64,000 nucleotides of DNA. Source: Ramazzottius varieornatus (lineage: Eukaryota > Animalia > Tardigrada). This document shows, one piece after another, positions 36,330 to 48,557 of the stretch. The DNA is taken from assembly GCA_001949185.1 (NCBI GenBank), contig BDGG01000002.1, positions 4,144,448 to 4,208,447 on the forward strand. Direction: 5' to 3'. The notes below the pieces were generated by a model. The model was not told the origin of the DNA and did no database searches. It was given only the letters and a program-made list of their open reading frames with translations. The position numbers and the translations under genes are program-made. The first letter of the stretch is position 1; each line of letters opens with the position of its first letter.

Positions 36330-39250
36330 TATGTTCTATGTCGCTATTTCCTCCTTACCACGGGGATTATACCTGTCGTGACATCCCGATGGTCAAAGTG
36401 TCCCGACAGACCGATAGAAGAGATCTGAGCTCCTTCCTCAGATCCTTCCCATCGGGGACCCTTGCAGGATTCTGGCTTCTTGTTGTAACTCGAGAAATCT
36501 GCTGCTGTGTGGTGCTTGGTCCGCTGAGCAGGAGGTGTCCCTCGGGGAACCCGTCGGTCCAGATCTTGAATGCGCTGATCAGCACTGCCTTCGCTCTGCT
36601 CATCCATAAGTTGTCCCACTGAACTTCGGCCAAGTGTTGCCGGTATTGGTTGAAGTCGCTGTCGTGTTGGCCTTTCGGGATCTTGCTTAGTCGGATGCTT
36701 TCCAGGAAGTCTTTTTGAACTCGCTCCAGTTGTTTCTGATGATTCTGGTTTGTAGGATTCCACACTGAACATGCATACTCAGTAATGGGGCGGACCAAGC
36801 TCTTGTATAACAATTGCCTGGCCGCACCGAGCCGTGGTGGGAAGTATGCGGATAGCGTGGAGTCTTTTCCGACACTTTGCAGTCACTGCGTCAACCTGCG
36901 CTGTCCAGTTCAAGTTTCTGTCTAGCACCACACCCAAACACGTAGACTGGCTTTCAGCAAGAATATTGATACCACTGATAGAGCAGCTACCTTGAGGCAC
37001 AGGAACACTTCCGCTTCTCTTGAATGACAGTCTTAGGTGTTGCGACTTATCCGAATTCAGGCTCAGCCCGGCGATGATGTAATTATCTCCCAGCTGGTCT
37101 AGACATTCTTGGAACGCTTGACAATCTTCGGTCTTGTCGATCACACGGTGGGCCACCAAGTCGTCGGCATACTGGAAGAGTTCGCACTTGACAAATTCAG
37201 AGTTTGTTCACCGCCACAATGAAAACAGCGGACCCAGAACGGAACCTTGCGGAACGCCTGACCGACCCTCGCTGTAGTCACTGTAGTAGCCTCCAACTGT
37301 CACTCTTTGTGTTCTGCCTCGCAGGTAATCAGACAGAAACTGCAACAGGTCGCCGGTGATGCCGTGGTCTTGAAGGCTTCTTACCAGTACTTCGTGGGGG
37401 ACTCGATCGAATGCCTTGGTGCAGTCTAGGAATACTTCGTCCACTAAGTTCTTCTCTGACAAGGCTTGCGACCACTGGTGTACCATATGGAGCAGCTGTG
37501 TCTATTGATCTGTTTGCTATAAAACCAAACTGCCTCGCGGTCAATAGACTATTCTTTTCCAGAAAGCTCAAAATTTGAACAGCTAAAACTTTCTCGAAAA
37601 CTTTAGACAGGAGGCAAAAGAGAAATGGGTCTCCAAGTGGCACCGCCTTTCTTTGGAACTGGCACAACATCGGCGCTTTTCCAAGAGGTGGGATACTGCT
37701 TCTTGCTGAGGATCAGGTTGAATAGTCGGGTGAGTGGATAGACGAGAGCCGAGCCAGCTGCCTTCATGAGAGGATTCGTCAGGAACGACGAGCCTGCTGC
37801 TTTCTTTCCACGCATCATCTTTAGTACACTCCACACTTCCGGTCCAGACACGTTTGAGTTTGGAAACCACTGCTTGCATCTTGTAACAGTGGATGGAATT
37901 TCGTTGATTGGCTGGCGATGCTCATCACACTGGCCGTAATCTTTCAGGAAAACGTCGGCTATGTGTCCAGCTTTATCCCTCGGATGGACCAGATACTTCT
38001 CTTTGCTGCCAGATACAGGAATGGGAGGAAGACTCTCAGACTTTGACGATTGCTTGACATGTCTCCAAAGTACGTTCGGACATCATCTTGACAGTGTGGC
38101 GATGTTTCGGAGTTGTTTTGTCTTTGCTGCTTTCAAGAGCCTCTTGGTTTCTCTCGCACAGTCTACCCAACCTCTGAAGTCTTTTGGAACTTGAGTCCTG
38201 TTCCACTTACGAAAAGCCGCGTCACGTCTCTTAAGGCTGTCAAGAACCCGTGGGGAGAGCTTTTCGATCCAACTTTCTTCAGAGCAAAATGGTTCTGCGC
38301 AATGTCCACCAACCTAGCCTCAAAAGTGACAGTTGCCACATCTGAATTACACTGGCAATCGAAGAACCTCTTCCAATCACAACTAGCTACGTCTTTGCGG
38401 AAATCTTGCTGGTTCCCAGACTCAAATGCACACATTAGTTTCGGTGGAGATGGGAAGCCCACTGTCCACAACCTCACGGAACACTGTAGTCCACAATGAT
38501 CATTGGGAAAGGTCAGCTTGGGAAGTATACTGACTTGACGGGCCAGGCTCAGCTGTGTTACGAAGAGGAGGTCCAAGCACGAAAAAGATTATTTACGCTG
38601 TTTGGTTATCCCCCGCACTTTCTGGAACAGACCGAACTCTTTCGTGATGGAGACTAGCTCCCTTGTACGGGGTTTCTTGGCTGACATGTCTTCCCAGTCG
38701 ATGTCTGCACAGTTGAAGTCACCTACCAGGATCAGGTTCCTTTGAAGATGGGGTGGAATTTTCGCAAGGGAAACACGACGCTTTCCGAACACTTTCATGT
38801 CATAACCTGGAGCATACAGGACACCGACCAGTGCGATCATCGACATCCTCACAACTTTCACCCACATCAGCTCGAGTCCTTCCACTCCATAATCGGCAGC
38901 TCTCAGCGTGTGAAGATCTTTCTTGGCTATGATTGCAAGTCCACCGCCGGATTCCTTGCGACATCCAGCCCGATCTTTCCTGTAGACATTGTACTTCTGT
39001 AAATCAGCAATCAGCCCATCCGTCACCGTGTCGTCTGCCATTGTCTCAACAAATGCCGCGATGTCGACTTTGCCTCTCTCCGTGCAGGCTTTCACTTCTT
39101 CCGTCTTCGACTTTATCCCGTTGAGATTCGCGTAACGGAGTATCAGCCGTTTCCCCAATTTCCCATCGGCCATCGCTAGGTTGTTCGCCATCTCTGTAAG
39201 CAGTGAGAGAAGAGCAGCCACAGGCAAACGCTAACAAATAAACAGTGGTA
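36330..39250 (-). mobile_element. Non-LTR retrotransposon (LINE, CR1/L2-like) with APE endonuclease and reverse transcriptase; frameshifted
   Basis: APE motifs YANLNGIKSK, VET, YRKDR..GGG, ILVGDFN, LDLLFV, NDH. RT motifs WKSADVVPVPKK, WRPISLL, QFGF, FLDCTKAFDRVPH, GVPQGSVLGPL, FQYADD, LGVVLD and LYKSLVRPITEYACSVWNP. Several frameshifts and stops. Confidence 0.95.
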
Positions 39251-40042
39251 CGGTTGATTGGAGCTACTTACGAGATGGTGTAGCTCCGGCTAGCTCGATT
39301 GCCTTCCATAGTTCGCCACACCAGACAGATCCTCGGAAATAGATGGCTTCTACCCCTAAGGACTCTGTCTGGATACTCTGGGGCCACCCAGAAGGGAAAT
39401 TGACGTCCAGATGGAATGGACTTCAAACAAAGGAAATTCAAAATCGCGCCGCGATCATGGTCAGGACAGGCGTAGTCCCTACTCTCCTTGTTGAAGGTTT
39501 TGCAGGATCTTCCAACCATAGAAGCTTACACTTACGGACAGTGTCCGTCGGTTACGGGTTACACTGGTATCATGTACGATTGTACGTCGGGACTTGGGGT
39601 TGTACTGTACTTATGTACTGTATACTGTATAGTGTATAGCAGTGTAAGACTTGGTTGATAAGCAGTAACCCTCTTGATCTGTTGTCCAAGCAGGTCCAAC
39701 CGTCCAAGTGAGCGATTGAGCATTTCTAATTTGCTATCAACGATTGCGAAGTGAGAATCAGTATACAGATTGCGAGCCAAAGCGCACTAGCACAATTCGA
39801 TACGCACATCGTGACATCATAGGAGCAAGTTCGTCTCGTAGGCGCTATGTCAAAAGAGTCGCACAATGTTTACGTATGATGTCACGATGTTCCTGTGCGT
39901 ATCGAATTGTGCTAGTGCGCTTTCGCTCGAAATCTCTCTAGTGCGATAAAATTCCGGAAGCCGGATTTCCGGATCCTGGGACGGGGGTTAATTTCCTTTT
40001 CCTTTAGTGTAATTGATCACCCAGGTTTTAGGACAGAGCACC

Positions 40043-41453
40043 ATGAACGGCTCCAAGAAGCCCGATCCCTTCCAGCAACTGAGCAGTTCCCTCGCTAGCC
40101 TCAACTCGTCAAGTCCGAATCAGCTGCAACACAGCCGGAATGTCGCTCGATCTCCTGCTGCTTCCCGCATTCCTAACATGCCTGACGCAGAGCTCAAGAA
40201 GTTTGTCGAATCAACGGAGAAGATGTTTGCAGACAGGTAAGGTACTGAACATTAGTGCTAAGCTCTGGGCTGGTAGTCGAATGCCCGAACGATAGAAGAT
40301 AGCAGACTTCGTTGTTTACTTTATCGTGTCTCGACGCTGAACCGTCGCAGATAGCTTAAGCTTATTCTACAGGAGCTTGTTGAATGCATTACCAGATTCC
40401 GGTCAAAAACTGCGGGACAACTTGGAGAAAGCTCGGGAGGAACTCCGTAAGCGCGAGTCAACTCCTGCCTTCGCTTCAGCTGACATCAACGAAGAAACAA
40501 CCATAGAGTCATTACCACCCAAGAAAGTCTCACCCAGACTCGAGGAACATGTCGAAACATCTCTGGTAGAGTCCATGCAGTCGATGAAGGTGGCTACTGA
40601 TGGCGGACATATGAATGAGGAAGTCAATGAGGCTCCCGAACCTTCTGATCGGTCTGACCAGGAACACACTCGTTCTTCCCGTTCGCCCAACACAACCACG
40701 AATTATATGGACAAGAAGAGCGTCTTTAGGGATCTCTTACAGCGCATTCCTGACACGACCAAATCCCTTTCTACGCTGTAAGTATTTGATTTTGCTGAGA
40801 AGTGTACAAGACTGATAAATCCACGAATCTCTTGCTGGTCTGATGATAGGCAGCTTCGCGATACTTGGCGCTCAGAGTCTCCGTCAGCTGCATCTCCTCC
40901 GAAAGAGGGACCCAAAGCAGCGAAAGTGCTGACGATCGAGGAAGGGTGTGAGTTGGCGAAACAACATGAACTGGCCCGGAAGGTACATATTTTTCGACGG
41001 GTGTAATTGTTTAGATAGCGCTGAGTGTTGCTGCTGTACGGCAGTAAATGACAGCAGACATCGTCTTCGACGGATGAATGCGTTACCTCTGCGAAGTCCT
41101 CAGCAGCGAATTTCACACATTGTTGTTTCTTACAGGAAGCCCAAGAAAGGCATGCTCAGTACGTACTGACGAATTTTGCGCCGAAAAGCAGCACTGCGTC
41201 TCAACCGAGCGATTCCTTCAGCCGCGCTTACGACTTTTATAAGTAGGAACGAACTTCATCACGCACTCTCGACTACCCAGGATATCCTTAGATACATCTA
41301 TCTGTATCGTACGGTTCACGTTCAAAATTAAGACCAAGCTTTTTCATTTGTAGTCATCGCGAGCCCGATGAAGATTACCTTACCGAGTCGGAAGAGGCGG
41401 ATGCGGAGGAAGATATAGATGAGGAGAGCGAACCGGATGAAAAAGAAGAATGA
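40043..41453 (+). CDS. POLR2M: POLR2M/GRINL1A (Gdown1)-like RNA polymerase II regulator, multi-exon
   Basis: N-terminal ELKKFVESTEKMFADR|SLLNALPDSGQKL (the LPDKG motif family), C-terminal VLTIEEGCELAKQHELARK|EAQ, and an acidic tail ending at TGA 41451-41453. Confidence 0.65.
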
Positions 41454-42194
41454 GAAGAGTTCTGACAATAAAGGAAGTTGCGGTACTTGGAAATTGTTTT
41501 ACAGCGTTTTATGGAAGGCTTTCGCGGATAAACGGTACCTTTCAGTTAGAACGTTCGCTTTTCTTATGAAAGTTGAGACGTGGGAGCCAGCTTTTCGGCA
41601 GCTGGAACGCACCCTAAACCAAAGTTCGACCACCGTTTAACCCATGCGCGATATGGTTAGCTTCTTGGGAATACTCCGAGCCTGTCGCTTTGATTCTTTG
41701 GAGGACTTTGTGAGGTTAATCAGAGTTATAGACGCGTTGTGGTGCGAGTAAATTATCATGCCTGTGGACAAAGTGTTATTCGATGCCCATCAATGATTAC
41801 CCAGACTTCCCAGTACTTCTTGGTTTCCCAAGCGTAGTCAGCCTGCCATTATTATGCACTATCTCGCTCGAGCTCGGAGTCATATCCTGTGGGCGAGCTC
41901 TCAGCATCACTATAGAACGCAAGACACCTTCGAGAAACCCCACACGTTATTCCGATGATGGTCCTTAAAAAGACGTATTGAGCAAATTTAGGAGATGAAC
42001 AGCAAAACGTGAAAATCATAAAGCGCTACAAAACATCAATTCTTTGCAAATTCACATTACGACCTCTCATTTTGAAATTCTGAAAAACGAGCATTAAGCT
42101 CATACAGATCAAGCAGTAAAACTACAAAACTAATCCCGTTTGATATAATAATCTTGTAAAATATAAAAACGTCAAAACAAAGGTTTGGGTATTT

Positions 42195-43879
42195 CTAGGC
42201 CGCCTGTTGCTTGATGGCCGAGTTTATCGCCGACATCGGTAGAGCACCTCCGTCCGCCGCCGAAAGGATCTGTTCGATCAATGTACTGGTCTTTGTCGAG
42301 TCCTCCAACTTCTTAGCATGCAGCATCTTCTCGTAAAGCTGAATGTAGTTCTTGGCCATGTTAGGTACCGAGAAGCGGTCATCGAACGTCTTGCGAACCA
42401 ACCTACGATCCATGGCAGCAGCACGAGGCACCGCGGCTACGGCTTCTTCGATACTCTCCACTAAGATGCCACTGCAGAAGCAAATAACGAAAATTCAGCT
42501 CACCCAATAAACATCAGGTCCATTACTCAAGTCATCGTTGAAACCCTCCAAGGTAAAACAGACTCGTAGCAAGAGCGACGCAAAGCACCGGTGTAATAAC
42601 AGCCACGGCGCGCGAGTTGAACAAAGTAGAGTGCGAACCGCCAACTCGCGCACCCCAATAGTTGGTAAAACGATGTCGTGCGCGACTTCATGGACTAAAG
42701 TAATTAACATTTGGAATTCCGTACCTGATGCCATCGTCGATGACTTCACGAACCGAACCATGAGGATAGGCGATGACAGGAGTACCACAAGACATGGCTT
42801 CGATCATGACGATACCGAAAGGTTCAGGCCAGTCGATCGGGAAGGCGAGAGCGATTGCGTTGCCCAAGAAATCGGACTTTTGTTCCTGGTTAATCTCGCC
42901 AATGAACTCGACCAGTGGGTTCCCGTCGATCATGGGCTTAATCTCCCTGTCGTAGTACTCTTGATCGGCCTTGTCCACCTTTGCAGCAATCCTCAGCTTG
43001 ATGCCAGCCTTCTGGGCGATTTCGATTGCGCGATCGGGTCGCTTTTCTGTAATTAGAAAATTTACTCAACCGGCAATCGGCAATCAAGATGAGTTCAAAG
43101 TCATCTTACCTGGAGAGATTCGGCCCAGAAAAGCCAAGTAGCCACCGTTGAAAGGAGTCAAGCTGAATCTGAGTGGAGGAATGCCGTGGTAGACGGTAGC
43201 GTAGAAGTTGGCGATACCTAGCAGGGGAATCCGCTGGTTGTCTGAGATGGAAACGATCTTCATGTCCTTGTATTCCGCGTACACTAACGGCAGGTCTTCA
43301 ATGTCACATCGTCCGTGGATGGTTGTAATACACTTGGAAGCCAAATGGCGGAACAGGCCGAAAGACAGGAAATCCGTGTGGAAGTGGATGATGTCGAACT
43401 GGAAGAACAAAGGATAACGAAATTAGGTACTTCCGGGTACGGTAGTACAGAACACGAACCGAGCTGACACCATACCAACGTAACCATTCTACACAAAGGA
43501 TTTCGCGTTTCAATTGATTACTTGATCAAAGAAGCTCTTTCATTTTAACGGGAACGGGATAACTGCGAAGCCACTACTTCCGGCTTCACGTCTTTACCTG
43601 GTCTTCCATCTGCAGGACCTTCTCGAACATGAGCATGCTGTAGATGCATTCGATCTTGATAGCAGGATTGAGCCGGATAGCGGTCTTGACGCATGGTATC
43701 AATCGCGCTTCCGTAATGGAATCTCCGCTCGCGAACAACGTCACTTGGTGGCCTTCTTTGACCAGCTCTTCCGTCAGGTAGCTCACAATCCGCTCAGTTC
43801 CTCCGTACAGTTGTGGAGGACAGCTTTCGAACAAGGGTGCAACTTGAGCAATGCGTAGTGATCGAATGCCGGGCTTCAT
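42195..43879 (-). CDS. Bacterial-type GT4 (GT-B, AviGT4-like) glycosyltransferase, 4 exons, about 389 aa
   Basis: RIAQVAPLFESCPPQLYGGTERIVSYLTEELVKEGHQVTLFASGDS, FDIIHFHTD, YLAFLGRISP|EKRPDRAIEIA, AAKVDKADQEYY, FPIDWPEPFGIVMIEAMSCGTPVIA. Exons 43879-43598, 43398-43110, 43046-42725 and 42471-42195 splice in frame (1170 nt). Confidence 0.93.
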
Positions 43880-45863
43880 CGTAGGAAAGGCTTTCTCGGA
43901 GCGAATAAATCATGAAGGAACAAGGATGCAACAATGGAAAAGTAACGAATCTCGAGCAAGATCGGTCAAAAACAAAGTGCTCTTACTTCGACCGAAGTAC
44001 GCATATCACACACAAAAGCTCCTCAATAAAACCGGAATGCACTGTCAGCTCGTAATCACAAGGACGTAACAAGTGGACTGCAGTCTAAGTATCACACACC
44101 CACGTCACAGGACCTCCATTTCTGAAAGGAAGAAGTTTGGAAGTTGGCCTTGATCGCGAAATCATGGACTAAATTTCCTTACTGAGAAGTTGTAGTGTCT
44201 ACAGGCACCTTAAGCACGGATTACCATAACTGATTTAACCGTAACAGCAGGTTGGACTTTCGCGATTGGTCCAGCGAGAGATCCGGTTTACCTCGCGGTT
44301 TGCACTCCATAGAAAAGTGAAGGCCGGCTTCTGGAAAATCGTACTTACCATCGGGGATTCCCCTCGTCCGAACTCAGAAGAAGCCACGTCCTCGCTGCGT
44401 GATCGATAGTCTGTCTCTAATCGTTCATTTGGTTTCTGTGTGCATACGGTCTTTTCACGCTCAGTCCTGACTTACTTATCATTATTGGTGTCTACCCGCG
44501 TGACATTTCCTATGAAACATGCCTTACAAAAACCATGCGGCAGTTACGTAATGGGTGGCGGATCGAGCTACCGGGTGGGTACTTCCTCACCGGCCAAATT
44601 CGACCCCATTTTTGTGCGCGACAACACTGAACTTTCCGAGAGTGCAGCGAATCAGGCGGCCCGTACAAGGTATCTCTCTGCTTGGTTTCTATTGGTAGGG
44701 TAACTCCAATGGTTGGTAGGTGGTAATAGAAAGAAATGTGTGTAAGGTAGCCTGGGCGGACCAAGACTTGCGCGATCAGGCACCTCGGCATGCACCGATC
44801 ATGAGCTCGTTGCATGGCCATGCACGCTCGGGTGGCCGATGAAATGCGGGTGAAGGACAACAGAACCATTAAGCATTTGACGATCGGATCGATCGACGGC
44901 GCCAACTGTCTTTTTGTGCATCTCGAATTCGCCACGATGGATGCCTCGCTCTCTTAGCATCGATGCTCGAAAAGATCATCCATCATCGAGCAGGGAACAG
45001 ACTTGACAGCCCGATTACAGACTCGGCCTTGTGGTTCCGAAGCTCAGAAAGGCCGTCTGCAAAGGTTCCAAAGATCATTGCCGTCTGCAAAGGCTTCGAG
45101 GTTCTTCCGAAGACAAACGTTCCAATTAGCCCAGTCTCATGCCCACAAGTTCTTTGTTTAATTTAGACTGCAAAATCCTGGTTTTTAGCAGGGGCCCCAC
45201 GAAATACTGAAAGACAATAAATAAACCTCTTGATATCATGTTGAAGAAGCTTTCGGAAAATGCAACGTCAGATTAACTTCGATAAATTCTTGATTGATGC
45301 GGAAGATCACATATACGAGATTCTGTATGTATACTGTATTACTGTATATTATTGTTTCGATGACTAGAACTCGTGAAGTTCAAAGTCGAAGCAGAAGGGA
45401 CCCCAGCTGTTGATCAGCCCTCCGGTCCAGTTTATGCGTTACGACAGCTAGTCGCGACGCTCCAAGGCTTCTACGGACACAGTCATCGACTAGCCGTGAA
45501 ATGGGGAACTCCCTCGGAGGCGGAAGTGATCGATCTCAATTTTTATCACATCCTCAGCGCGTTTTCGTCCTTGTGGCGGCTCACGAAGACGATGTTTTGT
45601 TCAAACATTACGCTCGAATGTCGTTGGCTTTCCGGTTAAAAGACAGGAGCAGCGTGCACTTCGGCCAGAAATTTCAAAAAACCCAATAACATTGTATTGC
45701 CATGAAACGGAGTACTCTGACGAAGGCGAAATTCGGAAACCGGGAGTGAATACTGTAATACAGCTAAAAGACGACAAGAAAAGAAACGAAATGCATAAAC
45801 TTCCGGCTTCCCCAGTAAGTAGGAGTGTCTTTTTCTACGTGTCCCTTGTAATTTTCACGATTC

Positions 45864-48557
45864 TCAAAACCGTGCTGTGCGACAAGTCTTCTCGTAGACA
45901 TCAGGGAAAGCCTTGGAACAATCCAGCTTGAGGCGCATTGTGTCGTACAAACTATGGTCAAACATTTCGCGGAACTCTTCTTTTGTCATGTAGCTATCCG
46001 CATACAGCATCTGGAACCTGGAAAGAGGAAATGAAAACAATCATCGACCGTTGACGACCAACACTTAGAAGTTCAGACAGAGGAAAGCCTAACTCACCCA
46101 GCATGTCTCCTGACAAAAGCTTCAATCTTCCTGGTAGTTTCCCGATACTGGAAACCCGGAACTTTGGGTTCTCCGTACGCTCCAATGTCCACGTACATTT
46201 CACCGGGAGCATCACCAGTCTTCTTAGCACGTGCCAAGCCTGGACCTGCCGGTAGCCAGAAGGGACATAGCCAAAGCGGAAAGATGTCGACTTCTTTCTC
46301 GAAACACTCAAGACTCGTTTGGACGTGTTGGAGGGGGACAAGCATGTCTTGAATCATTTGTCGTTGTTCGTACAGCCGACGAACAGTCTCGCCTTGTGTA
46401 AGCTTTAGGAAGGAGACTTTGGGGGGAACAATCCAGCCAAAGATGTAGCGAAACACTGGGTTATTCCCGAATGGTATGATATTCTATAAACCAAAAGGGT
46501 CAGCCTTCCAACCGCCGACATATCGGGTGCGTCAATAGGCCGCTGCACCTCAGGAGAAGAAAGAAATATACCTGAAGCATCCAGAAGATGCTTTTGGTGT
46601 GACGATGGTAGTAGTGGCGAAGTGGGATATACTCATATTCCGTCTTCGAGCTTCTTAGGAAGGACTCCACATGTTTGTAAAACCAGGGCTTCCAGTAATG
46701 TCCGATAGCATTGAACTGAAATACAAGAAAACCTAGATACTGTATGGATTCATGAATCAGAAGTTCAGAACCACGATAGATAGGGAGTTGAGCTCTGGGC
46801 AAGAATAGGACGGTTTCCATACTGACCTTGTCTTTCTCGACGACGTCGGTCATGGTGCCACACATGACGACGGCTTCGGTTCTCGAGAAGACTATCCCTT
46901 CCACGAAATGATTCTCCTCTCGTGCTAGAGACTTCTCTGAGAACACCTTGCAAAGCTCTTCAGTGGAATGAGTAGGGAAGTATTCCAGCTTGACGTATTG
47001 CTTTGCCGGAATAATCTGGATTTCTGCGGCGACCAGGAAGCCAAGAGTCCCATGAGACCATGGAATACATGCGAACAGTTCGGCGTTCTCATCCTATCAA
47101 ACAGAAGATACAGAATAGCTCCAACCACCCCTCACATATACAAAGCAAAATAAAGGTACATTCTTGTGTGATAAAATTTTAGATTTAATGACGCGACCAT
47201 CTTCGTTGAAAATTTTGTCATTAGCAATTTAGCACTGCGGCCAATATATTCACATACGTGTACATTGTCGACTAATCACTTTGCATGGTACCTTCGAACA
47301 GCGAACCAAAGATCCATCTTGCAGAACCAGTTCCACGGCGAGAACGATGTCTTGGAACAGTCCATAAATATGCGACGAGGTCTCAATTCCGACGCCCATA
47401 ATCAGCCCACCTGGAAGCAAGGCCCGCAGGTCAAAAGCAGTCTGAAAACTTTCGCGCATAAGGTTTTATTCCCAGAATGGATTTAAACGAACGTATCACT
47501 ATCTCAGCAATCGGGAAAAATCGAGAAAGACCAGAAAAGACCTGGAAAGACCTTAATTAGCTTAGAAAACGGATTAAACCCGCATTTTCTGCCGGGAAAA
47601 CTCGTTTCGGGGAAATTTCTAGCTCTTTTTCGGAATTGCAGATTTACACTTCCAGCCACTTTTCCTGTAACTTGGTTCGGGTCCTAATTATTTTCAATGG
47701 TATCTCAAGACCTCGACGGAGAACTGGAAAATTAATTCTCGAAAACAGCTCCAAAAACTGCGAAAGTCCTTCGCTCCTTTCCTGACTTAATCTCGATCTC
47801 CATTCCGTGAGCAGTTTTCTGGCCCATAATTTTGGGAAGAAAAATGTCTGCTGAACCAGGGAAAATTCACTTCGAAGTCGAGAAATGATCGCGTCGAGAA
47901 AGCCATGATTTTATGAGTGGTAGCAAGTTGGCTGGGACAGGCTGGATTATCCCGCGCTGCAAAAAAAACTACCGACTAACTAACCGATTGTCAGGTCATC
48001 CAGTTCGGGAACAACGGGAAGAGTGTATCCGAGCGGGTTGAGGGTTGCAGTTATCTGACCCATGGTCACAAGAGGTTCAACTCGGACGACCCTTCTTTCC
48101 GTATCCACATCGAGAATGTCCATTAGGTTGATCTTGATAGCGTTTAAAGTTTGCTTGTAAAGCGGCGTTCTGAAACTGATGGTCAGCCAACCTGGACGCG
48201 CTGTACACATCCGCTTTTGCCGACCTCCTGCGATCCATGCTTTAACCTTAACAAATACCAAGGTTGGTCAGCATAGCATATAAGGAGCGACCGGAAGTAG
48301 CCGGCTTCGTCAAGAACAGACCCTCTAACCTGATCTTGTATCTTTCTGACACGAAGATTGTGCTGCTTCGGTGCACTTCGAAGCCAAAAGATGATCCTGT
48401 TTCGCACGTAGAAGACCAGGTCGTACAGGGAAGACGCCGGGAGTAGGAACAGACATACGAATATCCAGCGATAGTGTATGATCACGTGCTCTAATCCCTT
48501 CAGCTTGATCAACGCGAGAATCGCCAGACCGGTGATCGAGCAAGCTTCGAGTAACAT
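45864..48557 (-). CDS. DHCR24: Delta(24)-sterol reductase (FAD-dependent), multi-exon
   Basis: [47 protein letters not shown]|[57 protein letters not shown]; stop at 45864-45866. Confidence 0.97.

What the first reader, a model, noticed from the sequence alone, without database searches (positions are those of the whole stretch)
42195..43879. Bacterial-type GT4 glycosyltransferase with three spliceosomal introns: probable domesticated horizontal gene transfer
Seen: an intact ~389-aa ORF after removing GT-AG introns at 43597-43399, 43109-43047 and 42724-42472. It keeps the GT-B acceptor motif (PPxLYGGTER) and the EX7E donor-binding motif (EPFGIVMIE), and sits between the animal genes POLR2M and DHCR24. 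Known: this motif set (IAQVAPL..S.PP..YGGTERIVSYLTEEL, LAFLGRISPEK, AAKVD, FPIDWPEPFG) is typical of AviGT4-like GT4 enzymes of Proteobacteria and other bacteria, not of animal GT4s such as ALG2, ALG11 or PIGA. Inference: an old bacteria-to-animal transfer that gained introns and an extra C-terminal tail of about 40 aa. With no signal peptide it may be a cytosolic enzyme making a small glycoside or protective sugar, which would be an undescribed pathway in this animal.
Basis: partly seen in the sequence, partly recalled or inferred. Interest (0 to 1): 0.85.

Follow-up and report, generated by a model that had tools for sequence, protein, structure and literature searches.

The report
Bacterial sugar-transferase gene domesticated in a tardigrade
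The tardigrade Ramazzottius varieornatus carries an intact, spliced and expressed glycosyltransferase gene of clearly bacterial type, and its closest studied relative makes a stress-protective sugar in cyanobacteria, so it is a testable lead for how this animal survives drying.

Summary
A four-exon minus-strand gene (CDS 43879-42195, 389 aa) has three GT..AG introns. Transcript contigs from four studies splice all three at the predicted bases and carry a poly(A) tail.

The gene is already in NCBI as hypothetical protein RvY_04843 of Ramazzottius varieornatus. I found no paper that discusses it.

All its near relatives are bacterial or metagenomic (at most 61% identity). It keeps all 85 near-invariant positions of that bacterial family. 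It lies on a 9-Mb scaffold beside spliced animal genes. An exon-sized reading frame from an unidentified second organism is 82-85% identical and shares the borders of introns 1 and 2. Horizontal transfer followed by domestication is therefore well supported. The donor is only loosely placed, near Alphaproteobacteria.

Two new points bear on function:
- The closest solved relative is not AviGT4 but TeGSS, a cyanobacterial UDP-glucose:sucrose alpha-1,2-glucosyltransferase (E 1e-89).
- In bacteria this transferase usually sits in an operon with a GH176-type hydrolase, a family whose one rigorously characterised member is an alpha-1,2-glucosidase.

The tardigrade has the synthase only. It most likely makes a soluble alpha-(1,2)-glucoside; the acceptor is unknown. 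The "gained C-terminal tail" is not supported.

The parts
41838..44170 (-). Whole mRNA of the GT4 gene (RvY_04843), about 1.82 kb after splicing
   Evidence: Transcript contigs of 4 runs span 41838/41841/41842/41933 to 44118/44142/44170. The loose end at 44170 in X1 looks like a template-switch oligo (from my memory), which would mark the 5' end. A non-templated T run before 41838 in X2 marks the poly(A) tail.
43880..44170 (-). 5' UTR (291 nt) with short upstream ORFs
   Evidence: There is no in-frame ATG upstream of 43879 before a stop.
43598..43879 (-). Exon 1 coding part, residues 1-94. It holds the first beta-strand and the glycine-rich loop with the catalytic Tyr25.
43399..43597 (-). Intron 1, 199 nt, GT..AG, phase 0
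   Evidence: Skipped in contigs of all 4 runs. The same exon border is seen in P0378.
43110..43398 (-). Exon 2, residues 95-190 plus the first base of codon 191
   Evidence: It is 45-57% identical to bacterial homologues and 82-85% identical to P0378.
43047..43109 (-). Intron 2, 63 nt, GT..AG, phase 1, inside the conserved GRxSPEK phosphate-binding motif
   Evidence: The same donor border is seen in P0378.
42725..43046 (-). Exon 3, the core of the Glycos_transf_1 domain with the E-X7-E motif (Glu265...Glu273)
   Evidence: Pfam 1.9e-17. It is 61-73% identical to soil bacterial genes.
42472..42724 (-). Intron 3, 253 nt, GT..AG, phase 2
42195..42471 (-). Exon 4 coding part with the TAG stop: the last helices of the fold plus an unconserved tail of about 40 aa
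41838..42194 (-). 3' UTR (357 nt) ending at the poly(A) site
45864..48557 (-). Upstream neighbour, a multi-exon DHCR24-like FAD oxidoreductase gene (context only)
   Evidence: The ORF pieces read like DHCR24 (my memory of the human protein). PF01565 matches at 47295-47411. The Atlas gives only related ALO/VAO-type clusters.
40013..41766 (+). Downstream neighbour, a spliced plus-strand gene (context only). The POLR2M identity is not verified.
   Evidence: A GT..AG intron at 41243-41353 is spliced in 4 runs. ORFs are listed. There is no GCOM2 match and no PDB match.

Best explanation
This is gene RvY_04843 of the tardigrade Ramazzottius varieornatus. It is a bacterial GT4 (GT-B fold, retaining) glycosyltransferase gene that entered the animal lineage by horizontal transfer. 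It then acquired a promoter, a poly(A) site and three spliceosomal introns, and it is maintained as a working enzyme.

The protein has no signal peptide or membrane segment, so it should act in the cytosol. It most likely binds a UDP-sugar, probably UDP-glucose, through the conserved Tyr25, Arg187, Lys192, Glu265 and Glu273. It would then transfer the sugar, with retention of configuration, onto a small soluble acceptor and form an alpha-glucosidic bond, probably alpha-1,2.

In bacteria the same enzyme is usually paired in an operon with a GH176-type hydrolase that would degrade the product. The tardigrade took the synthase only, so its product would accumulate or be turned over by other means.

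Shown: gene structure, splicing, polyadenylation, bacterial affinity, and conservation of catalytic and family-invariant residues.
Inferred: donor sugar, linkage, soluble acceptor, and any role in stress protection. The acceptor is unknown. Candidates are trehalose (the animal has its own synthase gene), dietary sucrose, or glucose/kojioligosaccharide.
For: Gene and expression:
- Exact splicing of all three introns and a poly(A) tail are seen in transcript contigs of 4 runs from 4 studies.
- The join is identical to the public 389-aa protein P0158 = RvY_04843, whose contig is 9.03 Mb long.
- The gene is single-copy in the 55.8-Mb, 200-contig assembly.

Bacterial origin:
- Each exon is collinear with single bacterial ORFs.
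- The best 120 of 5.8 billion clustered proteins are bacterial or metagenomic at 56-61% identity, with self at 871 bits and the next hit at 468 bits.
- The nearest Atlas clusters are 100% Bacteria.
- Exon 3 is up to 73% identical to Bradyrhizobium, Nitrospirota and Acidobacteriota genes.
- The protein falls on the alphaproteobacterial side of a 97% SH-aLRT split.
- Its GC3 of 65% lies between that of the host neighbour (54%) and the bacterial median (79%).

Kept as an enzyme:
- 85 of 85 columns that are at least 98% conserved in 108 bacterial homologues are retained, as are 44 of 52 columns at 90-98%.
- A second organism's exon-2 ORF (P0378) is 82-85% identical and has the same two exon borders.

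Function:
- TeGSS (PDB 7FG9/7FGA) matches over the full length at E 1.1e-89, about 46% identity by my count.
[quoted passage not shown] All of these are conserved here.
- In 66 of 127 bacterial loci a hydrolase of about 715 aa (GDE_N_bis plus an MGH1-like GH domain) lies beside the gene. In 56 of them it is directly downstream on the same strand, with a median gap of 16 bp, and the loci come from nine or more phyla.
- That hydrolase matches GH176 TgAMY (7VMA) at 2e-84.
- The one rigorously characterised GH176 enzyme cleaves only alpha-1,2-glucosides, including kojioligosaccharides and 2-O-glucosyl-trehalose (PMC13671375).
- HSP20 genes lie upstream in 9 loci.
Against: - No activity was measured, and no tardigrade metabolite is known to fit.
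- Identity to TeGSS (about 46%) is below the 63% shared by the two proven glucosylsucrose synthases.
- The fructose-stacking Trp10 of TeGSS is Phe17 here, and only 5 of the 11 cavity-rim residues are identical.
- The genome shows no sucrose-phosphatase family match, so sucrose is not made by the animal.
- GH176 is functionally diverse, with several uncharacterised clusters, so the operon partner does not prove the linkage.
- In Alphaproteobacteria, the side of the tree nearest the tardigrade protein, many loci instead carry a divergent MsbA/NdvA-like ABC exporter. This could point to an exported or lipid-linked product.
- Nesting inside Alphaproteobacteria is not statistically secured (AU p = 0.30).
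- The P0378 source organism is unknown.
Confidence: 0.6

Rival explanations
1. The origin is the same (bacterial transfer), but the enzyme does a different job. It would glycosylate a lipid, a polysaccharide primer or a non-sugar small molecule such as a pterin, rather than build a soluble alpha-1,2-glucoside.
For: Sources name many bacterial homologues 'glycosyltransferase involved in cell wall biosynthesis'. A divergent MsbA/NdvA-like ABC exporter is the neighbour in 38 of the 80 genome-contig loci, all Alphaproteobacteria or unclassed Proteobacteria. The next solved relatives are tetrahydrobiopterin glucosyltransferases (E 2e-23). Residues on the acceptor side differ from TeGSS.
Against: The source names are generic COG labels. 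The exporter is confined to one class, whereas the GH176-type hydrolase partner spans nine or more phyla with operon spacing. TeGSS is far closer than any lipid-acting GT4: PimA and BshA score 30-40 bits against 304 for TeGSS.
Confidence: 0.22
2. The gene is an expressed relic. It is transcribed and spliced but no longer matters to the animal.
For: The hydrolase partner and any bacterial regulator are missing. The 5' UTR carries upstream ORFs, one of which overlaps the start codon. No orthologue is seen in annotated animal proteomes.
Against: All 85 near-invariant family positions are intact and the frame has no stop. An orthologous exon in another organism keeps the conserved blocks at 82-85% identity. 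The transcript is assembled at high word depth in every run laid, which is only a weak hint.
Confidence: 0.08
3. The gene is a vertically inherited eukaryotic GT4 that merely looks bacterial.
For: None was found, apart from one unidentified organism that shares the gene and its introns.
Against: No eukaryotic protein appears among the best 120 hits. Every named hit is bacterial, and the Atlas clusters are 100% Bacteria. The other three Glycos_transf_1 loci of this genome lie elsewhere and do not match exon 3.
Confidence: 0.03
4. The locus is bacterial contamination or a chimeric assembly.
For: The protein is bacterial in type, and its CDS GC content is somewhat above that of the flanks.
Against: Bacteria have no spliceosomal introns or poly(A)-tailed spliced mRNAs, yet both are seen in four independent studies. 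GC content is uniform across the window. Spliced animal-type genes lie on both sides. The scaffold is 9 Mb long.
Confidence: 0.01

Closest known systems
Glucosylsucrose synthase TeGSS (tll1591, PDB 7FG9/7FGA/8X3U/8X3Q) and alr1000 of Nostoc PCC 7120
   Same: Full-length collinear match at E 1.1e-89, about 46% identity. Same GT-B/GT4 fold. Catalytic Tyr and Arg, the UDP-binding Lys and both Glu of E-X7-E are conserved. Soluble cytosolic enzyme of about 350 aa.
   Different: Trp10, which stacks on fructose, is Phe here. 6 of the 11 cavity-rim residues and 3 of the 4 C-terminal dimer-interface residues differ (the fifth, Glu160, was not mapped). There is no linked sucrose-phosphate synthase, and no S6PP family match in the genome. 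Identity is below the 63% shared by the two proven members. The host is an animal, and the gene has introns.
Uncharacterised bacterial 'glycosyltransferase family 4 protein' of the GT4-GH176 cassette (for example in Rhodomicrobium, Bradyrhizobium, Granulibacter, Roseomonas, Acidobacteriota, Verrucomicrobiota)
   Same: 56-61% identity over the whole fold. All 85 near-invariant columns are shared. C-terminal tails are variable.
   Different: The tardigrade gene has three introns, a poly(A) tail and an 8-residue N-terminal extension. It lacks the adjacent hydrolase and the ABC exporter.
UDP-glucose:tetrahydrobiopterin alpha-glucosyltransferase BGluT (PDB 5ZER, 5ZE7, 9V0L)
   Same: Same GT4 subfamily neighbourhood, a soluble enzyme acting on a small-molecule acceptor.
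   Different: Much more distant (86 bits, E 2e-23).
   Same: GT4 fold and the C-terminal nucleotide-sugar domain.
   Different: Only 43.5 bits, and only residues 180-297 align. It is not the closest relative.
TPS-TPP trehalose synthase gene of R. varieornatus (Hara et al. 2021, PMC8277472)
   Same: Another sugar-synthesis gene found in R. varieornatus. The paper's title attributes trehalose genes in anhydrobiotic animals to gene loss and horizontal transfer. The genome has the Glyco_transf_20 locus on contig 8.
   Different: It belongs to a different family (GT20) and its product is known. No link between the two genes has been tested.
Animal GT4 enzymes (ALG2, ALG11, PIGA)
   Same: They share the Glycos_transf_1 domain. 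This genome has three other such loci.
   Different: None of them appears among the best 120 relatives. From general knowledge, those enzymes are ER membrane-associated and act on dolichol or PI-linked acceptors.

Membership tests
CAZy GT4 / GT-B retaining glycosyltransferases | Two Rossmann-like domains: Glyco_transf_4 at the N-terminus and Glycos_transf_1 at the C-terminus | tested here: met
   Pfam PF13439 4.6e-13 (residues 25-126) and PF00534 1.7e-23 (residues 181-306), both above their cut-offs. The Atlas model has pTM 0.86 and TM 0.87-0.90 to bacterial GT4 clusters.
CAZy GT4 / GT-B retaining glycosyltransferases | E-X7-E motif and a basic Arg/Lys pair that binds the nucleotide diphosphate | tested here: met
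   Glu265...Glu273 and Arg187/Lys192 align with TeGSS Glu256/Glu264 and Arg179/Lys184. They are invariant in the 8-sequence alignment.
Glucosylsucrose synthase (TeGSS/alr1000) | Catalytic Tyr18 and Arg179, whose mutation nearly abolishes activity | tested here: met
   Tyr25 and Arg187 align with them (residues defined).
Glucosylsucrose synthase (TeGSS/alr1000) | Sucrose contact Trp10 and the 11-residue rim of the acceptor cavity | tested here: not met
   Trp10 is Phe17. 5 of the 11 rim residues are identical: Tyr18, Arg117, Lys184, Trp254 and the second Glu. Tyr70, Glu74, Tyr97, Thr119 and Asn122 are Glu, Ser, Phe, Asp and Leu here (read from the alignment).
Glucosylsucrose synthase (TeGSS/alr1000) | Sequence identity at the level seen between proven members (63%) | tested here: not met
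   About 46% (157 of 342 aligned positions, counted by hand).
Glucosylsucrose synthase (TeGSS/alr1000) | Sucrose available from a linked sucrose-phosphate synthase/phosphatase pathway | tested here: not met
   PF05116 (S6PP) has no match in the whole genome, although the controls ring. Dietary sucrose is not excluded.
Glucosylsucrose synthase (TeGSS/alr1000) | UDP-glucose-dependent alpha-1,2-glucosyl transfer to sucrose | not testable with these tools
   Needs an enzyme assay and NMR of the product.
Bacterial GT4 of the GT4-GH176 cassette | Full-length similarity and retention of family-invariant residues | tested here: met
   56-61% identity to the best 120 hits. 85 of 85 columns conserved at 98% or more are kept.
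Bacterial GT4 of the GT4-GH176 cassette | Adjacent GDE_N_bis/GH176-type hydrolase gene | tested here: not met
   Present in 66 of 127 bacterial loci. In the tardigrade genome neither PF14742 nor the hydrolase protein finds a match.
Domesticated bacterium-to-animal gene transfer | Nearest relatives are non-metazoan, with a large score gap to any metazoan protein | tested here: met
   No metazoan protein other than the gene's own product is listed.
Domesticated bacterium-to-animal gene transfer | Spliceosomal introns, polyadenylation and expression shown by RNA | tested here: met
   four runs from four studies. The runs' RNA nature is the tool's guess, but spliced poly(A) contigs can only come from RNA.
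Domesticated bacterium-to-animal gene transfer | Physical linkage to host genes | tested here: met
   9.03-Mb contig. Spliced neighbours lie on both sides. Window GC content is uniform. Long-read linkage was not examined.
Domesticated bacterium-to-animal gene transfer | Phylogenetic nesting inside a donor clade | tested here: inconclusive
   The protein falls on the alphaproteobacterial side of a split with 97% SH-aLRT and is sister to the metagenome protein P0277 (91%). The AU test does not reject placing it outside that group (p = 0.297).
Domesticated bacterium-to-animal gene transfer | Persistence in more than one species | tested here: inconclusive
   One exon-2 ORF (P0378, ENA, 2.2-kb contig) is 82-85% identical with shared intron borders. 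Its organism is unknown. No orthologue is seen among annotated animal proteins.
   2IUY scores 43.5 bits over residues 180-297 only, against 304 bits for TeGSS.

The most novel reading that the evidence does not exclude
Ramazzottius varieornatus uses this bacterial enzyme to build alpha-1,2-glucosylated non-reducing oligosaccharides in its cytosol. One route is glucosylation of its own trehalose to the trisaccharide selaginose. Others are glucosylsucrose or kojioligosaccharides. Because the degrading GH176 partner was not transferred, these sugars would accumulate. They could act as a glass-forming protectant in an animal known to hold very little trehalose. That would be a sugar-protectant pathway not known in any animal.
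Probability: 0.18. Interest if true: 0.85.

Novelty: new member of a known kind. Interest (0 to 1): 0.55.

Why it matters
Tardigrade anhydrobiosis is currently explained mostly by disordered proteins, and trehalose levels are low or undetectable (PMC9526748, abstract). Here is a robustly expressed, intact synthase of bacterial origin. Its only studied relative makes stress-induced protective oligosaccharides in cyanobacteria. That gives a concrete candidate for a missing small-molecule protectant.

The candidate is directly testable. R. varieornatus can now be knocked out by DIPA-CRISPR (PMC11175437). The GH176 alpha-1,2-glucosidase offers a specific analytical reagent.

The locus is also one of the cleanest single-gene cases for real horizontal transfer in a phylum where such claims were long disputed. 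It combines three RNA-verified introns, a poly(A) tail, a 9-Mb scaffold and an orthologous exon with shared intron borders.

Separately, the bacterial GT4-GH176 cassette, found in nine or more phyla, links two recently characterised enzyme families into one probable alpha-1,2-glucoside cycle.

Tried and rejected
Neighbour identification and context look-ups:
- Pfam on ten flanking ORFs gave only a retrotransposon endonuclease hit.
- PDB searches with neighbour exons found nothing.
- The Atlas placed a DHCR24-like exon only among ALO/VAO-type clusters. I briefly read that neighbour as L-gulonolactone oxidase, and dropped the idea when the ORF texts matched DHCR24 as I remember it.
- Pfam GCOM2 found no POLR2M domain, and its controls cannot ring for a eukaryote-only family.
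I therefore could not fetch the contig of P0378, of P0277, or the annotated neighbourhood.

Literature and supplementary data:
- No supplementary files are held for Hashimoto 2016 or for the HGT compendium. I could not confirm that the gene is on their lists.
- No paper mentions RvY_04843. A further literature search gave nothing relevant.

Search for more orthologues:
- The metagenome scan with exon 2 found only bacterial-type genes, at most 60% identical, and no further eukaryote orthologue.

Alignment and tree runs that failed:
- P0004, the first scaffold I chose for the exon alignment, is a frameshifted metagenome ORF and was discarded.
- The mixture-model tree of 109 rows was killed for memory.
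- One script call returned no answer.
- One reference included a stop through a coordinate slip; I corrected it and resent it.

Searches for a transferred partner or a sucrose pathway in the tardigrade genome were negative:
- GH176-type hydrolase.
- S6PP.

How the spliced model was handled:
- Searches with window sequence were made exon by exon, by reference.
- Full-length searches used the public record P0158, which an exon-wise profile search had returned.
- The only joins were local script checks of identity and composition read from window.fa.

Full report
**What is at the locus**

Reading the minus strand of 42000-44100 gives a gene with four coding exons: 43879-43598, 43398-43110, 43046-42725 and 42471-42195. 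They are separated by introns of 199, 63 and 253 nt. Each intron begins GT and ends AG, and the phases are 0, 1 and 2.

The join is 1170 nt, which gives 389 codons plus TAG with no internal stop. Pfam finds the start of Glyco_transf_4 in exon 1 and Glycos_transf_1 in exon 3 when the exons are searched separately. On the whole protein it finds both domains above their cut-offs.

**How the spliced model was searched**

All searches with window sequence were made exon by exon, by reference. I aligned the four exon peptides, as separate rows, to a full-length bacterial homologue. That profile then retrieved a public 389-aa protein, P0158.

P0158 is named by NCBI 'hypothetical protein RvY_04843 [Ramazzottius varieornatus]' and by UniRef 'Glycosyl transferase family 1'. 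A local script that read window.fa showed that the four-exon join is identical to P0158. All later full-length work used that public record.

The assembly has 55.84 Mb in 200 contigs, and the protein's contig is 9.03 Mb long. The organism is therefore the tardigrade R. varieornatus, and the gene model is already public.

**Is it transcribed and spliced?**

Many small runs of one organism hold about two thirds of the words of the 3-kb stretch I searched (window 41500-44500), as an mRNA would. I laid contigs of four runs from four studies on 41200-45200.

- In every run a single contig of 1.67-1.84 kb covers 41838/41933 to 44118/44170.
- Each contig skips exactly 42472-42724, 43047-43109 and 43399-43597. 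These read CT..AC on the plus strand, which is GT..AG on the gene's strand.
- There are no other differences from the window.
- One run carries ten non-templated T before 41838, which is a poly(A) tail on the minus-strand RNA.
- Another run carries, at 44170, a loose end that I recognise from memory as the reverse complement of a template-switch oligo. That would mark the capped 5' end.
- The neighbouring plus-strand gene is also spliced, at 41243-41353 (GT..AG).

The tool labels the runs as RNA only by guess. Even so, intron-less, poly(A)-tailed contigs can come only from RNA. Word depth of this transcript is 13-22 times that of the neighbour in the same runs. The tool warns that this is a poor measure, so I treat it only as a hint of solid expression.

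**Whose gene is it?**

- *Collinearity.* Each exon aligns collinearly with single uninterrupted bacterial ORFs. Identities are 52-72% for exon 1, 39-57% for exon 2, 61-71% for exon 3, and 30-47% for the first 50 or so residues of exon 4.
- *Exon 3 against representatives.* Against 1.84 billion representatives, exon 3 finds 185 proteins at E ≤ 1e-30. The ones I looked up are metagenomic or bacterial.
- *Full length.* With P0158 against 5.8 billion clustered proteins, self scores 871 bits and the next hit 468 bits at 61% identity. The best 120 form a flat plateau of 56-61%. Every named entry is bacterial: Rhodomicrobium, Roseomonas, Granulibacter, Bradyrhizobium, Microvirga, Tautonia and others.
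- *Atlas.* The nearest ESM Atlas clusters are 100% Bacteria, both by features and by structure.
- *Other animals.* No animal protein other than the gene's own product appears. This includes the annotated proteome of Hypsibius exemplaris, which I assume to be in that collection; I did not verify this.
- *Copy number.* The gene is single-copy in its genome. The three other Glycos_transf_1 loci lie elsewhere.

**Is it kept as an enzyme, and is it in other animals?**

In an alignment with 108 bacterial homologues, all 85 columns that are at least 98% conserved are retained. So are 44 of the 52 columns conserved at 90-98%, and the eight changes are mostly conservative.

A search with exon 2 alone found one exon-sized ORF, P0378 (ENA, contig 2.2 kb). 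It is 85% identical over the exon. It is 82% identical over 107 residues of the window's own read-through ORF.

Similarity starts at the same residue after an acceptor-like '..Q' and ends at the same '..P|GK' donor read-through. Introns 1 and 2 therefore sit in the same places in that organism, and the transfer predates the split between the two.

A scan of the metagenome collection found only bacterial-type genes at 60% or less. The window's own exon-2 ORF is also absent from that protein collection. Missing exon-level hits from other tardigrades therefore mean nothing.

**Donor**

A FastTree of 109 rows and an IQ-TREE (LG+G4) of 41 rows both pair the tardigrade protein with one JGI metagenome protein, P0277 (support 95 and 91). 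Both place the pair on the side of a well-supported split (97% SH-aLRT) whose named members are all Alphaproteobacteria. The other side mixes Acidobacteriota, Verrucomicrobiota, Nitrospirota, Chloroflexota, Bacteroidota and others.

An AU test does not reject a position just outside that alphaproteobacterial group (p = 0.297). The donor is therefore 'probably alphaproteobacterial or near it' and no more.

The coding GC (52.4%, GC3 65%) lies between the DHCR24-like neighbour (48.8%, GC3 54%) and the bacterial homologues (medians 62.5% and 79%). This fits partial amelioration.

**What does it do?**

The closest solved structure is not AviGT4 (43 bits, partial). It is TeGSS, the tll1591 protein of Thermosynechococcus elongatus, at E 1.1e-89 over residues 8-349. 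By my count 157 of 342 aligned positions are identical.

[quoted passage not shown] The glucosylsucroses they make accumulate under salt and heat stress (PMC9909042).

- *Conserved here:* the residues that paper shows to matter. These are Tyr18 and Arg179 (mutants nearly inactive), Lys184 and Glu256 on the UDP diphosphate, and the second Glu. They correspond to Tyr25, Arg187, Lys192, Glu265 and Glu273.
- *Different here:* the acceptor side. The Trp that stacks on fructose is Phe17. Only 5 of the 11 rim residues are identical. Three of the four C-terminal dimer-interface residues differ; the fifth listed residue, Glu160, was not mapped.

I therefore do not file the protein as a glucosylsucrose synthase. 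It works like one on the donor side.

**Bacterial gene neighbourhood**

This gives an independent line of evidence. Among 127 bacterial or metagenomic loci that hold the gene, 66 have a hydrolase of about 715 aa beside it. In 56 it is directly downstream on the same strand, with a median gap of 16 bp. The loci include Alpha-, Beta-, Gamma- and Deltaproteobacteria, Acidobacteriota, Verrucomicrobiota, Nitrospirota, Bacteroidota, Chloroflexota and Hydrogenedentota.

The hydrolase carries GDE_N_bis plus an MGH1-like (alpha/alpha)6 domain. It matches PDB 7VMA at 2e-84. 7VMA is the GH176 enzyme TgAMY.

A 2026 paper shows that the one rigorously characterised GH176 enzyme cleaves exclusively alpha-1,2-glucosidic bonds. 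[quoted passage not shown] The same paper shows that all its kojibiose-binding residues are conserved in TgAMY (PMC13671375).

So the nearest studied transferase makes alpha-1,2-glucosides, and the studied relative of the operon partner degrades them. Small heat-shock protein genes lie upstream in nine loci.

Two cautions apply. GH176 holds several uncharacterised clusters. Many alphaproteobacterial loci instead have a divergent MsbA/NdvA-like ABC exporter that reaches no curated cut-off, which keeps an exported or lipid-linked product possible.

**What the tardigrade has and lacks**

- The genome gives no match to GDE_N_bis or to the hydrolase protein. Only the synthase is there.
- It has no sucrose-phosphatase family match. 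Sucrose could only be dietary.
- It does have a Glyco_transf_20 trehalose-phosphate synthase locus. This is the TPS-TPP gene discussed by Hara et al. (PMC8277472).
- The protein starts straight into the first beta-strand after eight residues and shows no hydrophobic leader. A cytosolic location is therefore likely.

The most likely mechanism is a cytosolic, UDP-glucose-dependent, retaining alpha-glucosyltransferase that builds an alpha-1,2-glucoside on a small soluble acceptor. Trehalose (giving selaginose), dietary sucrose, or glucose/kojioligosaccharide are candidates. None has been tested.

- The roughly 40-aa C-terminal tail is not an animal innovation. Bacterial members have unconserved tails of 10-45 residues.
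- 'AviGT4-like' should read 'TeGSS-like'.
- The upstream neighbour does read like DHCR24. This rests on my recollection of the human protein, on the ORF texts, and on a weak FAD_binding_4 hit at 47295-47411. The Atlas gave only related ALO-type clusters.
- The POLR2M identity of the downstream gene is not confirmed.

**Novelty and standing**

Horizontal transfer into tardigrades is an established, if modest, phenomenon. Published figures are 1.2% or less, or 234 genes, by HGT index in this species (PMC5034306), and 0.7-1.8% in H. dujardini (PMC5531438).

By its scores this gene would pass the HGT-index criterion those papers use. I could not see their lists. No paper in the library names the gene.

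What is new here:
- single-gene validation, with RNA-proven introns and an orthologous exon with shared intron borders;
- the link to glucosylsucrose synthase;
- the GT4-GH176 cassette in bacteria.

I rate it a new member of a known kind, of moderate to good interest, because it yields a direct and feasible test of a non-trehalose sugar protectant in an anhydrobiotic animal.

**Limits**

- No enzyme activity, metabolite or quantitative expression was measured.
- The donor clade and the age of the transfer are only bounded.
- The second organism is unidentified.
- Cyanobacterial sequences could not be added to the tree, because the PDB sequences carry no id usable in the other tools.
One tree run was killed for memory, and one script call returned nothing.

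Noticed in passing
L002-L161 (bacterial and metagenome loci); example L087:5915-8062: A widespread two-gene bacterial cassette pairs a TeGSS-like GT4 with a GDE_N_bis/GH176-type hydrolase directly downstream (median gap 16 bp). It occurs in nine or more phyla, sometimes with an HSP20 gene upstream. It looks like an uncharacterised cycle that makes and breaks alpha-1,2-glucosides.
   Followed up: partly
window 38589-39227 (-): A 212-aa ORF matches the Exo_endo_phos / endonuclease-reverse-transcriptase families. It is probably a fragment of a non-LTR retrotransposon about 3 kb beyond the downstream neighbour.
   Followed up: no
window 43794-44020 (-), 5' UTR of the GT4 gene: There are two upstream ORFs. 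One is a 12-codon ORF starting near 44013. The other is the frame of the 46-aa ORF 43934-43794, with an ATG near 43913, and it overlaps the main start codon out of frame. Both could damp translation.
   Followed up: no
window 44089-44178: In two runs, short contigs (77 and 92 nt) map to both strands of the same 30-65 bases just inside the 5' end of the transcript (records 5 and 10). They are probably hairpin or template-switch artefacts of library making.
   Followed up: no
G000:C8:1067301-1068897 (+): The trehalose-phosphate synthase (Glyco_transf_20) locus of the same genome matches in three pieces with stops between them, so it also has introns. It is the only strong GT20 locus found.
   Followed up: no
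window 46500-46946 (-): The Atlas places this DHCR24-like exon nearest to D-arabinono-1,4-lactone oxidase clusters (score 0.95). This nearly misled me into calling the neighbour an L-gulonolactone oxidase. It shows how a single exon of a VAO-type flavoenzyme can be misnamed.
   Followed up: yes
L003-L078 (alphaproteobacterial loci); example L018:374-2137 (-): In Bradyrhizobium and other Alphaproteobacteria the GT4 gene is divergently paired with an ABC exporter of about 587 aa. The exporter resembles MsbA and the glucan exporter NdvA/ChvA but falls below every curated NCBIfam cut-off.
   Followed up: partly
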